A stretch of 64,000 nt of DNA from Chrysemys picta bellii (lineage: Eukaryota): contig NC_088803.1 of NCBI RefSeq assembly GCF_011386835.1, forward strand, positions 5,952,001-6,016,000, in the 5' to 3' direction. Made by a program: the position numbers and the translations under genes. Of this stretch, positions 2,926-64,000 are shown in pieces (position 1 is the stretch's first letter; each line of letters starts with the position of its first letter). A model generated the notes under the pieces. It saw nothing but the letters and a program-made list of their open reading frames with translations. It had not been told where the DNA came from and did not search any database.

Positions 2926-5900
2926 TCAGGAGCGAGTGAAGGCCTCCAGCCCCCGGGTGAGGAGCGCCTGGGTCATTCCATCAGGGACCAGGATGCAGGT
3001 GACACCTGTGGGGGAAGAGGAGAGAAGGGGTGACCCCCATTATTCATCCCCGCCCCACCCTTCCATTTGCTCCCCTCCCCCCGCAACATCTCAGTCCCTG
3101 AACCCTCCTTCTATTCCCTCCCTGAACCCTCCCCCAACATTCACCCATGTGGGGTTGGCAGGGGAGTCCTGCCCAGGAGGGCTGGGGGCACCCCCAAGGG
3201 GGTTCTGAGGTCCCCCCCCCCGTACCTAGCTTACTGACGTCCCGGATGTTGCGCTCCTCGTCGTCGAAGAACAGCATCTGGGCGAAGGGGACCCCGGTGT
3301 CCTGCTGCAGCCTGGGGGGGAGGGGCAGACTCAGGGCTGGCAATATGGGGGTCAGGGGGCAGTGAGTGTTGGGGCCGGGGGGTTACTTGGGGAAGTGGGT
3401 GCTCTTCCCCCTAGGCTGGATCTCAGCAGGGGGAGTGGGGTTTAGGGGTGCAGGGGGTACTTGGTGCGGTGGGGTCTTGGCGGTACCTGTGGAAGTGGGG
3501 GGTGCAGCAGGGTTTGGGGTGCAGTGGGTACCTGTGGAAGTGGGGAGGGTTGGGGGTGCTGGGGTGCAGTGGGTAAATGTGGGAGTGGGGGAATGGAAGG
3601 TTTGTGGGTGCTGGGGTTTGTGGATGCAGTGGGTACCTGTAGAAGTGGGGGGTTGGGGATGCACCGGGTACCTGTGGAAGTTGGGGTGCTGGGGTTTGGG
3701 GGTGCAGTGGGTACCTGTGGAAATGGGGTGCCAGGGTTTGGGGTACAGGGGTTTGGGGGTACAGTGGGTACCTGTGGAAGTTGGGGTGCCAGGGTTTGGC
3801 GGTGCTGGGGCTTGGGGGTGCAGCGGGTACCTGTAGAAGTGGGGGGTGGGGATTTGGGGGTGCCAGGGCTTGGGGGTGCAGTGGGTTCCTGTAGAAGTGG
3901 GGGGTTGGGGGTGCACCGGGTACCTGTGGAAATGGGGTGCCAGGGTTTGGGGGTGCTGGGGTTTGGGGGAGCAGCGGGTACCTGTGGAAGTTGGGGTGCC
4001 GGGGCTTGGAGGTGCATCGGGTACCTGTGGAAGTGGGGGGTGGGGATTTGGGGGTGCCAGGGTTCGGGGGTGCAGCGGGTACCTGTGGAAGTGGGGGGTG
4101 GGGATTTGGGGGTGCCAGGGTTCGGGGGTGCAGCGGGTACCTGTGGAAGTGGGGGGTGGGGATTTGGGGGTGCTGGGGTGCCGAGGTTTCGGGGTGCAGC
4201 GGGTACCTCTGGAAGTGTGGGGGTGGGGATTTGGGGGTGCTGGGGTGCCGAGGTTTCGGGGTGCAGCGGGTACCTCTGGAAGTGGGCACTCTTCCCCCCG
4301 GGGTAGATCTCCACACGGCGCAGGAAGCGCCGCACACCGAAGAGCTCCAGCAGCTGGGTGGCGCCGCAGGTCTCGCCCGTCCTGGGGGGGGGGAGGGCAG
4401 TCAGGGGTGTGGGGTGTCGGGGGGTACAGGGGGTGTCGGGGGGCAGGGGTCAGACACTCACCGGGAGGCGGCTGCCATGGGGATGCCCAGGCCCTGCAGT
4501 TGCTCCAGCACAGCCGGCACCTCGGGGTACAGCCGGACGGGGCGGCCGCGGGCATCCAACACCGAGCCAGCCCTGGGGGCAGATGGGGTTACCCGACTCC
4601 TCTGACCCCCTGTGGCCCCTTATAGCCTCCTCTGACCCCCTATAGCCCCTCCCTCTCTGGGCCCCTATAGCCCCCAATCCCCTAAAGCCCCTCCCCTCTG
4701 ATCCCATAGCCCCTCCCCTCTGACCCTCATATCCCCTATCGCCCCTCTGTTGCGGATTGTGGGGGAGTTAGGGCCCTGCACCCCTCTTCCCGAGATTCAC
4801 TGCGACTCTCAGCCAGCCAGTAAAGCAGAAGGTTTATTTAAGGACAGGAACACAGTCTCAAGCAGAGCGTGTAGGTACGACCAGACCCCCCTCAATTAGG
4901 TCCCTCTGGGAGGTTCAGGGAGCTTAGACCCCAGCTTGGGGTTCCCTGCGTTGCACCACCCAGCCCCAACCGAAACTAAACTCCCAGCCCCTCCCGCTGC
5001 TCCTCTCCTTTGTTCAGTCTCCCGGGCAGAAGGTGTTAATTCTCCCCACCCCCGTTCCTGGCTCAGGTTACAGCTCAGGTAGCTCCCTTCAAGGGAAGTC
5101 CCACATCCCCACTGCAACCCCCCTGCAACATTCCCAGGTCAAATCTGCCCTGCTCCCTGCTCCGTCACATCTCTCCCCCCTTCGAGACTGAACTGAGCGG
5201 GGTCACTCTGACCAGTGACCTGGGGAAGTTCAGGGCTCCCTCTCCGGGACAACGCGTCCGCTATCAGGTTGTCACGTCCCTTCACATGGACCACGTCCAT
5301 GTCATAATCCTGCAGGAGCAGGCTCCATCTCAGGAGCTTGGCGTTGGCTCCTTTCATCTGGTGCAGCCAGGTCAGGGGAGAGTGGTCGGTGTGCATGGTG
5401 AAGTGACGCCCAAAGAGATATGGCTCTAGTTTCTTGAGGGCCCACACCATGGCCAGGCATTCCTTCTCGATGGCCGCGTAGTTCTGCTCCCGGGGTAGTA
5501 ACTTCTTGCTCAGGTACACGATGGGGTGTCTCTCCCCCTTTTCATCCTCCTGCATTAACACCGCCCCCAGTCCTGTGTCTGAGGCGTCGGTGAACACCAT
5601 AAAGGGCTTGTCAAAGTCTGGGTTTGCCAGAACTGGGCCACTGACCAGAGCCTCCTTCAGCGCCCGGAGAGCCTCCTGGCACTCCTCGGTCCAGACCACT
5701 TTGTCTGGCTTCCCCTTCTTGCACAGCTCAGTGATGGGGGCGGCTATGGCGCTAAAGTGGGGCACGAACCTCCGATAGTACCCTGCCATCCCAATAAAGG
5801 CTTGGACCTGCTTTTTGGTTTGAGGAGCGGGCCAGTCTCTGATCACCTCCACTTTGGCTGGTTCCGGCTTTAGGCAGCCGCTTCCCACCCGGTGGCCTAG

Positions 5901-62233: not shown

Positions 62234-64000
62234 ATGGCGGACCCGCCCCGAGGCGGCGGCGTTGGGCGCAAGCGGCGGCGGCCCGGGTCGGACCCCCCCG
62301 GGCTGGGGGCGCGGCCCCGCCTGGATCCCGACGCCGCGGGCTACTTCCGCCGGGCCGCCGAGAGCCTCCGGGCCGGGCTGGGGCCGGGCAGCGAGCGGGG
62401 TGAGCGGGGGCGCGCTGGGGGTGCTCGGCGCTGTACGTCTCTCACTGTTGTCCACCCGCCCCCCTGGGTGGCGGCTTGGGGGTGGTGGGGTCGCTGGGGG
62501 ATGCACAGCGCTGTATGTCTTCCACTCTGTCCTCCCCCCATGTCTGTTCGTCACCAATGTGCTGGAGGACGCCTGGGGGGGTGTCCCAGGGGGGTGCACG
62601 GCGCTGTACATCTCTTGCTGTATTGTCCCCCCTCCCCAGGTCTGTTCATCACCAACGTGCCGGAGGAGGTGGCGGGGGGATAGTGGGGTCACTGCGGGGT
62701 TGTGACGATGCTGCCCGGGGGAGCCAGCTGAGGTCACTCAATCAGGGTGAACTGCAAACAGAACGGGGCAAACCCCAAACGCTGGTGGATCTTCCAATCC
62801 TTAGATTTACCAACCAGCCCAAACCAGCCTCTGTATTACCTCACGGGGGCCTCAGAAGTTCCCTTAAAGTGCCCAGCGCCAGGCCTCCACCCAGACACAC
62901 CTGTCAGGTCTGATGATGATTTGAACATTTTATCTCATCATATAAAAAAAAGGTTCTTCTAACCCCAAAGGATCAGCCACACCCCCAGGTCCAATGAGAA
63001 CATAGATCTTACCCCCAATACGCACTTATAGTCAATTCCTGTTAACTAAGCTAAAATTATTATAAAAGAAGAGCAAGAGGGTTGGTTAAAAGATGAATAT
63101 ACAGACGGACGCCTTCAGTTCTTGAGGGTTAGATACATATAGCAGAGATGAGCCTGTCGTTGCCAAATGTCCTCTTAGAAATAGTCCAATGTCCATATTC
63201 AGGGTGACTCCAGTCAATAACTGGGGAGCTCAGGCCTTGTGGCTCAGGGTTTCCCCCTCTTGAAACCCAAAGCAGATCTCTGATGAAGGCTCGTGTCCCG
63301 GGGTTTTTATACATTTCCAGCAGCCTTTTGGCCTGAGAAAACAATAGGCTTCACTTCCCTTCTCCTACCATCCTGGCAATTAGCACAGGGTAACTTATCC
63401 ATTAAACAGTTCAGATACAAAAAGAACAGGCGTACTTGTGGCACCTTAGAGACTAAAGTGCTACATGTACTCCTATTCTTTTTGCGGATACAGACTAACA
63501 CGGTTGCTACTCTGAGTTCAGATACAGGTTGCCACAACCTTCAAAGAGACATATAGACAATAATACTATTTCCCTCAAGTATCTTCATAAATATTACAGT
63601 GCTGCTCCTTTTTTGATCTCTGAATCAAAGCTATAGCAATAGATGAGACTTGTTTGCTGACGTTACAAGACCTGAGCAAACATCTCCCCTCTAGCTCTGA
63701 CAATGCAGGTTGCATTTCAAAGCTCTATGTATTTACATATCTTCCTAACCAGTCTTTATAAAGTTTGGCCCTGGGTCAGGTCAGTCTGTGAGTTAATTAA
63801 CTCTTTCTGGCCCTGTGTCACCTTTCAATGGGAGATTATATTCCACTCATAATGTCACAGGGGTGCATGGTGCTGTACATCTCTCACTGTGTTCTCCCCT
63901 CCAGGTCTGTTCGTTACCAACGTGTTGGAGGAGGCGGTGGGCTCCGCGCTGCCCCTGGCCCTGGACCCTTCCGGCTCCCTGCTGCTCCAGGCCCTGCTGC
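62234..64000 (+). CDS. NOP9: NOP9 nucleolar Pumilio-repeat protein, exons 1-2 (5' partial gene)
   Basis: Exon 1 62234-62399 (RLDPDAAGYFRRAAESLR, donor G|GTGAGC); exon 2 from 63905 (GLFVTNVLEEAVGSALPLALDPSGSLLLQALL); resembles recalled human HLSPEALGYFRRAL...LMVHNIMKEV...GSEMLQELL. Confidence 0.85.
62701..63859. mobile_element. Solo LTR (1159 bp) in NOP9 intron 1, with nested Penelope remnant (about 63420-63515)
   Basis: TGTGAC...GTCACA ends; perfect TSD GGGGT (62696-62700, 63860-63864). Confidence 0.8.

What the first reader, a model, noticed from the sequence alone, without database searches (positions are those of the whole stretch)
3440..63940. Recurrent splice-junction-seeded repeats: at least 8 exon boundaries in 5 genes are copied into the neighbouring intron
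Seen directly: MDP1 exon-4 donor (about 14 copies), GMPR2 coding-exon-4 donor (10 or more), GMPR2 last-exon acceptor (3 extra), TINF2 exon-8 donor (2 extra), TGM1 exon-13 donor (5 extra), TGM1 exon-5 acceptor (2-3 extra), TGM1 exon-3 donor (3 extra) and NOP9 exon-2 acceptor (3 extra). In each case the repeat unit spans the junction (exonic nucleotides plus GT or AG) and extends into the intron, while the real CDS stays intact. Most donor copies keep GT; two of the three NOP9 acceptor copies have lost AG. Inference: a mutational process nucleated at splice junctions in this GC-rich chromosome creates arrays of decoy, poison or recursive sites, and some splice-site choice or silencing mechanism must cope with them. 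I know of no description of this as a locus-wide pattern, but could not search the literature.
Basis: partly seen in the sequence, partly recalled or inferred. Interest (0 to 1): 0.85.

Follow-up and report, generated by a model that had tools for sequence, protein, structure and literature searches.

The report
Intron minisatellites that copy exon edges
In this GC-rich painted-turtle gene cluster, several old intron minisatellites begin or end inside an exon and so repeat its splice site many times; the copies are real, but the layout is already known, is no commoner than repeat density predicts, and the RNA examined uses the true sites.

Summary
The window is Chrysemys picta bellii CM062330.1:5,952,001-6,016,000. 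I mapped all 44 coding exons of MDP1, NEDD8, GMPR2, TINF2 and TGM1.

**Observation: confirmed.** Junction-spanning copies are robust at 6 of 78 junctions. They are also visible by eye at the NOP9 exon-2 acceptor. The TINF2 case is weak.

**These are true duplicates.**
- About 0.1 chance hits are expected, against about 30 copies seen.
- The arrays recur in five other turtle assemblies.
- RNA-derived contigs cover the GMPR2 intron-4 array almost base for base.

**The idea of a process nucleated at splice junctions fails.**
- Random intronic positions lie in a local repeat 33-45% of the time; junctions do so 6-9% of the time.
- A random-placement model predicts 5-7 straddling arrays.
- The same arrays occur in Emys, Terrapene, Malaclemys, Mauremys and Chelonia.
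- No new junction array appears in any of those lineages.

**Splicing.** In RNA contigs from four runs, every canonical GT..AG joint listed uses an annotated GMPR2 or TINF2 site.

**Precedent.** The layout matches boundary-spanning minisatellites such as human F7 IVS7 (PMC1557585). The regional pattern matches the "exon stuttering" of chicken dot chromosomes (PMC12954441).

**What is modestly new.** The pattern occurs in turtles, the arrays are old, and the TGM1 exon-3 edge evolves in concert with its intronic copies.

The parts
3386..4286 (-). MDP1 intron-4 minisatellite, units of about 43-67 nt. Its first unit includes the last 13 nt of exon 4 (exon 4274-4381; first intron base 4273). It holds 15 donor copies, 13 with GT. 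The last copy, at 3386, carries 38 exonic nt.
   Evidence: units are CAG|GTACCC against the real GAG|GTACCC
19086..19700 (+). GMPR2 intron-4 38-nt minisatellite starting 12 nt inside coding exon 4 (18924-19097). An inserted interspersed element at about 19750-20480 splits it, leaving a remnant unit at about 20513-20550.
   Evidence: RNA contigs 19083-19601 and 19069-19675 match with 4-7 differences
22127..22446 (+). GMPR2 intron 8 is made almost entirely of degenerate copies of the intron tail plus the first 38-39 nt of the last exon. Acceptor copies lie at 22299 and 22355, both with AG. The real acceptor precedes 22447.
   Evidence: RNA joint 22126|22447 in four runs
24160..24445 (-). TINF2 exon 8 (24393-24445) and two weak, gapped look-alikes of its donor near 24221 and 24171, which carry a SINE-like GAACCCAGGAGTCC motif.
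   Evidence: not detected by the scan in any species; real donor used in RNA
29197..29950 (-). TGM1 exon 13 (29790-29950) and the intron-12 array. Five copies carry the last 14-16 exonic nt plus GTAAGG, at 29734, 29510, 29349, 29294 and 29197.
   Evidence: 27 copies in Chelonia
36642..37393 (-). TGM1 exon 5 (36642-36760) and two short acceptor copies with 9 intronic and 17 exonic nt, at 37393 (AG kept) and 37245 (AG lost).
   Evidence: also seen in Emys and Mauremys but not in Malaclemys or Chelonia
39960..40815 (-). TGM1 exon 3 (40624-40815) and three copies of its last 44-46 nt plus a GTGAGA donor, at 40448, 40302 and 39991.
   Evidence: 3-9 copies in five turtles, all with GT
62412..63940 (+). 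NOP9 intron 1. Three tandem copies (62412-62680) hold the last roughly 45 intronic nt plus the first roughly 35 nt of exon 2. A 44% GC spacer follows, then the real acceptor before 63905.

Best explanation
**What it is.** These are ordinary but unusually dense and long-lived intronic minisatellites in a GC-rich gene block with short introns.

**How they arise (inferred).** A tandem duplication that happens to span an exon-intron border leaves the exon and its outermost splice site untouched. It places the extra copy, meaning the exon edge plus GT or AG plus intron, inside the intron. Such a duplication is tolerated, whereas one lying wholly inside an exon is not.

**How they persist (partly shown).** Unequal exchange or gene conversion then expands, contracts and homogenises the array. 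For TGM1 exon 3 this includes the real exon edge.

**Why there are several.** About a quarter of intron bases here are tandem repeats and the introns are short. Geometry alone then puts several array ends inside exons.

**How splicing copes.** The exon-proximal copy is used: the most upstream donor or the most downstream acceptor. This was shown for GMPR2 at contig level only. It agrees with the 5'-to-3' scanning rule shown experimentally for the human F7 IVS7 minisatellite. Most decoy uses would shift the frame.
For: - The copies are true duplicates: 0.11 chance hits expected against about 30 seen.
- Tandem repeats cover 26% of intron bases and 2.6% of exon bases.
- Junctions lie in a local repeat less often than random intron positions: 6-9% against 33-45%.
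- Random placement predicts 4.9-6.6 straddling arrays among 38.
- The same arrays, with different copy numbers, occur in Emys, Terrapene, Malaclemys, Mauremys and Chelonia. No new junction arrays appear.
- Non-junction arrays are conserved too.
- Orthologous intron lengths differ by kilobases between turtles.
- RNA contigs of four runs join 19097|20592 and 22126|22447, and unspliced contigs carrying the array have 1-6% of the spliced depth.
- Nearly all decoy donors would cause a frameshift or a stop.
- Mauremys reevesii has ATC in the real exon-3 end and its proximal copies; M. mutica has GTC in the real end and its first copy.
- Precedents: PMC1557585 and PMC12954441.
Against: - The placement model is crude. 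It treats arrays as blocks and uses TRF periods.
- RABGGTA, DHRS1 and most of NOP9 were not mapped.
- The RNA evidence is from assembled contigs, which drop rare isoforms. It covers GMPR2 and TINF2 only, not MDP1, TGM1 or NOP9.
- GT or AG is kept in 90-100% of copies, and the junction core is the best-conserved part of the units. This could hint at selection, though anchoring bias and array homogenisation explain it too.
- How the upstream acceptor copies of GMPR2, which keep AG in all four turtles examined, are silenced is not shown.
Confidence: 0.8

Rival explanations
1. Junction-nucleated mutagenesis. Something at splice junctions, such as transcription- or splicing-coupled damage or secondary structure, preferentially seeds tandem duplication there.
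For: - Eight cases lie in one 64-kb window.
- In chicken, more than 90% of exon-derived copies start within 1 nt of the exon border (PMC12954441).
Against: - The border bias follows from survivorship. Only duplications that reach across the border are tolerated and also recognisable as exon-derived.
- Junctions are depleted for repeat membership, not enriched.
- The observed count equals the random-placement expectation.
- No lineage-specific births appear at about 70 other junctions in six turtles.
- Ostrich TGM1 introns are 70% tandem repeat but have no junction copies.
Confidence: 0.06
2. The decoy arrays are kept by selection because they do something. Candidates are U1 or U2AF binding platforms, back-up sites, or recursive YAG|GT splice points in MDP1.
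For: - The arrays are shared by turtle families that split long ago.
- GT is kept in 28 of 28 TGM1 exon-3 copies and in 66 of 72 MDP1 copies.
- The junction core is more conserved than the rest of the unit, 0.93-0.98 against 0.83-0.91.
- MDP1 units read C-rich tract, then CAG|GTACCC.
Against: - Non-junction arrays in the same introns are equally old.
- The conservation measure is biased by anchoring at the junction and by ungapped alignment.
- Within-species homogenisation keeps copies alike without any selection.
- No RNA joint at a copy appeared among the listed joints.
Confidence: 0.08
3. Assembly artefact: the copies are collapsed or mis-expanded repeats in this one assembly.
For: The sequence is GC-rich and repetitive, and an N run lies at 2129-2297.
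Against: - Homologous arrays occur at the same junctions in several independent assemblies of other turtle species.
- RNA-derived contigs from three runs span 19069-19675 with 4-7 differences.
Confidence: 0.01
4. The junction look-alikes are fragments of an interspersed element (a turtle SINE-like motif, GAGAACCCAGGAGTCC) that resemble exon ends by accident.
For: The motif occurs in the TINF2 intron-8 look-alikes, in the TGM1 intron-12 unit, and elsewhere in the window at 55490-55708 and 59077-59167.
Against: - In TGM1 intron 12 the SINE-like part lies downstream of the copied 14-16 exonic nt plus GTAAGG. It therefore rides along in a unit that still includes the true junction.
- The other five arrays carry no such motif.
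- This may fully explain the TINF2 case only.
Confidence: 0.05

Closest known systems
Boundary-spanning minisatellites of human genes: F7 IVS7 (37 bp), IFI6/6-16 intron 2, CBS IVS13, LMNB2, PDGF intron 4 (Borensztajn et al. 2006, PMC1557585)
   Same: - The first monomer spans the exon-intron border, so the donor is repeated many times in the intron.
- The pseudo-sites are as good as the real one.
- Normally the most upstream site is used.
   Different: - Here several such arrays sit in neighbouring genes.
- Acceptor-side versions exist too (GMPR2, NOP9, TGM1 exon 5).
- The exonic part can reach 46 nt.
- The arrays are shared across turtle families.
- Copy-number polymorphism within the species and the behaviour of the pseudo-sites were not tested.
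Sequence stuttering and exon stuttering on chicken dot chromosomes (Hron et al. 2026, PMC12954441)
   Same: - GC-rich genes whose introns are filled with imperfect local tandem repeats of tens to hundreds of nt.
- A minority of introns carry copies of the adjacent exon edge. In chicken the source lies within 1 nt of the border and the median exonic part is 36 nt.
- Orthologous intron lengths vary strongly.
- Ostrich TGM1-TINF2 lie on a 6.96-Mb chromosome, with 70% of TGM1 intron bases in repeats.
   Different: - The authors report not finding it outside birds, apart from gerbils. Here it is in turtles, on a 55.6-Mb chromosome.
- Repeat coverage is lower: 26% overall and 32-60% in TGM1.
- The junction arrays are old rather than recent.
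- Variation within the species was not tested.
Intron gain by tandem duplication of an AGGT-containing exon segment (Rogers model; potato RdRp case, PMC4974935)
   Same: A tandem duplication creates extra splice-site copies.
   Different: No intron was gained. The TGM1 exon-intron structure, 14 coding exons of matching lengths, is the same in lizard and ostrich (the alligator model carries one extra, short first exon). The duplications only lengthen existing introns.

Membership tests
Boundary-spanning minisatellite (F7 IVS7 type) | Head-to-tail array of a 10-150 nt unit inside an intron | tested here: met
   TRF rows at 3482-4286, 19086-19485, 29253-29782 and 40026-40562
Boundary-spanning minisatellite (F7 IVS7 type) | The first (or last) monomer includes exonic bases and the splice dinucleotide, so the site is repeated | tested here: met
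   9-46 exonic nt plus GT or AG in the copies at six junctions; NOP9 by eye
Boundary-spanning minisatellite (F7 IVS7 type) | Only the exon-proximal site is used in mature RNA | tested here: inconclusive
   Met for the GMPR2 intron-4 donor and intron-8 acceptor in contigs of four runs. Contigs cannot exclude rare use, and MDP1, TGM1 and NOP9 were not examined.
Boundary-spanning minisatellite (F7 IVS7 type) | Copy number varies between alleles | not tested
   Only differences between species were seen, for example 3 to 9 and 5 to 27 copies
Sequence / exon stuttering (Hron et al. 2026) | Introns largely covered by imperfect tandem repeats of local origin | tested here: met
   26% of intron bases in five genes; TGM1 introns 32-60% in five turtles, against 3-4% in lizard and alligator and 70% in ostrich
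Sequence / exon stuttering (Hron et al. 2026) | Partial copies of the adjacent exon in the intron, with the source at the exon border | tested here: met
   All robust cases start at the border
Sequence / exon stuttering (Hron et al. 2026) | Extensive intron-length variation among individuals | not tested
   Only kilobase-scale differences between species were seen
Sequence / exon stuttering (Hron et al. 2026) | Location on a very small GC-rich (dot) chromosome | tested here: not met
   The record is 55.6 Mb and the window lies about 6 Mb from one end. The window itself is about 62% GC.
Recursive splice sites (AG|GT ratchet points) | Pyrimidine tract plus AG directly followed by a GT donor | tested here: met
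   MDP1 units read C-rich tract, then CAG|GTACCC. This motif is not present in the other arrays.
Recursive splice sites (AG|GT ratchet points) | Stepwise use seen in RNA (intermediate joints or lariats) | not tested
Intron gain by tandem duplication | A new intron absent from outgroups | tested here: not met
   The same 14 coding exons of TGM1 occur in lizard and ostrich (the alligator model adds one short first exon). GMPR2 has 9 coding exons in all four turtles examined.

The most novel reading that the evidence does not exclude
This turtle block is syntenic with an avian small-chromosome region and shows the same sequence and exon stuttering that Hron et al. report not finding outside birds and gerbils. 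In turtles the junction arrays are shared by lineages that split, by published time-trees as I recall them, about 100 My ago or more.

The coding exon edge is itself a member of the array. The TGM1 exon-3 end and its proximal intronic copies share ATC (Ile) in Mauremys reevesii and GTC (Val) in M. mutica. This residue flips Val/Ile repeatedly across turtles. Intronic copies may therefore feed variants into the coding sequence by unequal exchange or gene conversion.
Probability: 0.3. Interest if true: 0.6.

Novelty: new member of a known kind. Interest (0 to 1): 0.4.

Why it matters
- It shows that a striking pattern, dozens of intact decoy splice sites beside real ones in neighbouring genes, needs no special junction-directed process. 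It follows from very high minisatellite density in short introns, combined with the fact that a border-spanning duplication is harmless.
- It extends the recently named avian "exon stuttering" to turtles. There the arrays can persist for a very long time, which bears on when this instability arose in sauropsids.
- It offers natural test cases for splice-site choice. These include 13 to 26 near-identical donors, and acceptor-side arrays, which the one splice-choice study read here (PMC1557585, on F7) did not cover.
- It hints that exon edges can be homogenised with intronic copies.
- It warns gene-model builders. Two database models of this TGM1 (647 and 640 aa) read through or skip into these repeats.

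Tried and rejected
- **Pfam scans for exons.** Scans of long stop-free stretches found only a few exons. They gave nothing for NOP9, DHRS1 or most of RABGGTA, so those genes are not in the statistics.
- **TGM1 seed search.** The representative-library search with one TGM1 exon returned mis-predicted models (P0121, P0122) that read into repeats. They served only as stepping stones to the correct proteins.
- **Junction-core conservation.** I do not count this as evidence for selection. Copies were found by anchoring at the junction, and ungapped columns decay with indels.
- **TINF2 exon-8 donor.** The copies did not pass the scan in any species. I treat them as SINE-like look-alikes.
- **Weak single hits.** MDP1 intron 2, TINF2 introns 7 and 8, the TGM1 intron-2 acceptor and the TGM1 intron-11 acceptor are at chance level.
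- **Chicken supplements.** A search of the chicken paper's supplements for these gene names found nothing.
- **Intron gain by duplication.** Considered and rejected.
- **Assembly artefact.** Rejected.
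Full report
**Identity of the window and gene models.**
A GMPR2 exon found by Pfam led to turtle GMPR2 proteins. The Chrysemys picta bellii protein maps to GCA_011386835.2 CM062330.1. 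The fetched 25-kb locus is 100% identical to window 7467-32636. The window is therefore positions 5,952,001-6,016,000 of a 55.6-Mb chromosome.

With same-species proteins and a splice-aware exact matcher I mapped GMPR2 (9 coding exons, plus strand) and TINF2 (11, minus strand). TGM1 (14 coding exons, minus strand), MDP1 (6) and NEDD8 (4) were mapped from tblastn, splice sites and translation. The spliced lengths are 348, 357, 812, 160 and 79 aa, equal to the annotated products. This gives 39 introns (28,587 nt) and 78 junctions. RABGGTA was only glimpsed through one Pfam hit. DHRS1 gave no hit and its presence is assumed from human gene order. NOP9 exons 1-2 were read by eye.

A junction-anchored ungapped scan required at least 8-9 exonic nt and 6 intronic nt. 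It found copies at these sites:
- MDP1 intron-4 donor: 15 copies, 13 with GT.
- GMPR2 intron-4 donor: 5 strict copies. TRF sees 10.5 units of 38 nt beginning 12 nt inside the exon.
- GMPR2 intron-8 acceptor: 2 copies with 38-39 exonic nt and AG kept, plus a partial third.
- TGM1 intron-2 donor (exon 3): 3 copies with 44-46 exonic nt.
- TGM1 intron-3 acceptor (exon 5): 2 short copies.
- TGM1 intron-12 donor (exon 13): 5 copies, all GT.

NOP9 has three tandem copies of the acceptor region just after exon 1, at 62412-62680. One keeps AG. The real acceptor lies 1.26 kb further on, beyond an AT-richer spacer.

The TINF2 exon-8 case is only two gapped look-alikes carrying a SINE-like motif, so I rate it weak.

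The same queries against non-cognate introns hit 0.0019 times per kb. That predicts 0.11 chance hits where about 30 are seen. The copies are true duplicates and every CDS is intact.

**Not an assembly artefact.**
Homologous arrays sit at the same junctions in independent assemblies of Emys orbicularis, Terrapene, Malaclemys, Mauremys reevesii, M. mutica and Chelonia mydas. RNA-derived contigs from three runs cover 19069-19675, including the exon-intron border, with 4-7 differences.

**Is it more than repeat density predicts? No.**
- Tandem repeats cover 19.6% of the window, 26% of intron bases and 2.6% of exon bases.
- Under three stringencies, a random intronic position has a copy elsewhere in its own intron 33-45% of the time. 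A junction has one 6-9% of the time.
- I treated the 38 intronic TRF arrays as blocks dropped at random into the non-repeat part of their introns. With that model, 4.9-6.6 arrays (sd about 1.9) should have a unit reaching at least 8 nt into an exon. Observed: 4 by TRF arrays whose unit includes the junction, and 6 by the scan.

**Age and turnover.**
Copy numbers at the same junctions across turtles:

| Junction | Copies | Species, in order |
|---|---|---|
| MDP1 intron-4 donor | 15 / 14 / 16 / 27 | Chrysemys, Emys, Terrapene, Mauremys |
| GMPR2 intron-4 donor | 4 / 6 / 11 / 4 | Chrysemys, Emys, Terrapene, Mauremys |
| GMPR2 intron-8 acceptor | 2 / 4 / 4 / 3 | Chrysemys, Emys, Terrapene, Mauremys |
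| TGM1 exon-3 donor | 3 / 3 / 6 / 7 / 9 (all with GT) | Chrysemys, Malaclemys, Emys, Mauremys, Chelonia |
| TGM1 exon-13 donor | 5 / 4 / 5 / 3 / 27 | Chrysemys, Malaclemys, Emys, Mauremys, Chelonia |

- No other junction gained an array in any lineage (46-78 junctions scanned per species).
- Ordinary, non-junction arrays of the same introns are also shared with Mauremys and Chelonia, with different lengths.
- Orthologous introns differ by up to several kilobases.

So a few old seeding events were followed by continuing expansion and contraction. This is not recurrent birth at junctions.

Outgroups:

| Species | TGM1 intron bases in tandem repeats | Junction copies |
|---|---|---|
| Ostrich (TGM1 on a 6.96-Mb chromosome) | 70% | none |
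| Alligator | 4% | none |
| Cordylid lizard (Hemicordylus) | 3% | none |
| Turtles | 32-60% | present |

**Concerted evolution with the real exon edge.**
Within each species the real TGM1 exon-3 end and its intronic flank resemble that species' own proximal copies more than the orthologous flank of other species. Mauremys reevesii has ATC (Ile) in the real end and in the next three copies. M. mutica has GTC (Val) in the real end and in the first copy. This residue alternates Val/Ile across turtles. Exchange that includes the first unit is the simplest reading. Recurrent CpG mutation is the alternative, and it was not excluded.

**Splicing.**
By U1 complementarity the decoys equal or beat the real donors:

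| Site | Real | Decoys |
|---|---|---|
| MDP1 | 5 of 9 | 6 of 9 for most; the first equals the real site |
| GMPR2 | 5 of 9 | up to 6 of 9 |
| TGM1 exon 3 | 5 of 9 | identical |
| TGM1 exon 13 | 6 of 9 | one at 7 of 9 |

Nearly all decoy uses would shift the frame or meet a stop.

Contigs of four RNA runs show these joints:
- GMPR2: 19097|20592, 20673|21515, 21621|21843 and 22126|22447. The intron-7 joint 21885|21967 appears in one run.
- TINF2: 24393|24037.

No canonical GT..AG joint at a copy is among the listed joints. Unspliced contigs across the array have 1-6% of the spliced depth. Contigs hide rare isoforms, and MDP1, TGM1 and NOP9 were not examined.

For donors this fits the 5'-to-3' scanning rule shown with 50 F7 constructs (PMC1557585).

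For acceptors the real site must be the most downstream copy. In GMPR2 only the real one is preceded by a branch-point-like CTCAC. That is an inference from sequence, not a test.

**Comparison with what is known.**
Borensztajn et al. state that several human genes carry minisatellites whose first monomer spans an exon-intron boundary. They name F7, IFI6, CBS, LMNB2 and PDGF.

Hron et al. (2026) describe "sequence stuttering" and "exon stuttering" on chicken dot chromosomes:
- 236 introns in 115 genes.
- More than 90% of sources within 1 nt of the exon border.
- A median exonic part of 36 nt.
- They report not finding it in other vertebrates, apart from gerbils.
- They list IRF9 and CARMIL3 as expected on dot chromosomes. 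In human gene order, as I recall it, these neighbour this block.

The present case is therefore a new member of a known kind. What is new is the host (turtles, on a 55.6-Mb chromosome), the age of the arrays, and the evidence that an exon edge is homogenised with its copies.

**Verdict.**
The junction-nucleation mechanism is not supported. The need for a splice-choice rule is supported, and it is already explained in principle.

Noticed in passing
window 4748-11005: A nearly intact Ty3/Gypsy-type retrotransposon sits inside MDP1 intron 2. It has ORFs of 966 and 769 aa, and LTRs about 99.3% alike at 4748-5176 and about 10578-11005. The intron is 7065 nt here but roughly 0.9 kb in Emys, Terrapene and Mauremys, so the insertion is young and lineage-specific.
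   Followed up: partly
window 23208-23976: In three RNA runs the main TINF2 contig joins 23976 directly to 23208. It skips the 71-nt exon 23288-23358 together with the 99-nt-period array intron. This is an isoform different from the 357-aa model.
   Followed up: no
window 19750-20480 and 21600-21800: Two stretches inside GMPR2 introns have very high summed contig depth in RNA runs, up to about 2,300 and about 38,000. They also show many non-canonical joints, as expected of interspersed repeats expressed from many loci. The first one splits the intron-4 minisatellite.
   Followed up: no
window 1-509: A very homogeneous 44-nt minisatellite of 11.6 copies with 97% matches, at the start of the window.
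   Followed up: no
window 28408-28486: A coding 15-nt repeat in the last TGM1 exon encodes SPARG-like pentapeptides. Its length differs between turtles; the window is 15 aa shorter than the Lepidochelys protein.
   Followed up: no
L009 (ostrich), L010 (alligator), L011 (lizard), L005-L008 (turtles): The share of TGM1 intron bases in tandem repeats is 70% in ostrich, 32-60% in turtles, 4% in alligator and 3% in a cordylid lizard. Intron GC is about 0.64-0.68 in the turtles. Locus GC is 0.65, 0.64 and 0.50 in ostrich, alligator and lizard. GC alone does not predict repeat load, because the alligator locus is GC-rich but repeat-poor.
   Followed up: partly
window 37503-38252 and database models P0121, P0122: Two public TGM1 models of turtles (647 and 640 aa) read through intron repeats or fuse TGM1 with TINF2 exons. 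This shows how these arrays mislead gene prediction.
   Followed up: partly
L008 intron 2 of TGM1 (Chelonia): Each 119-121-nt unit holds the exon-3 end plus a GTGAGAG donor, followed about 45 nt later by a CTGCAG acceptor-like site. Besides this array, a separate 68-nt, 10-copy, 96%-identical array lies near the 3' end of the same intron.
   Followed up: no
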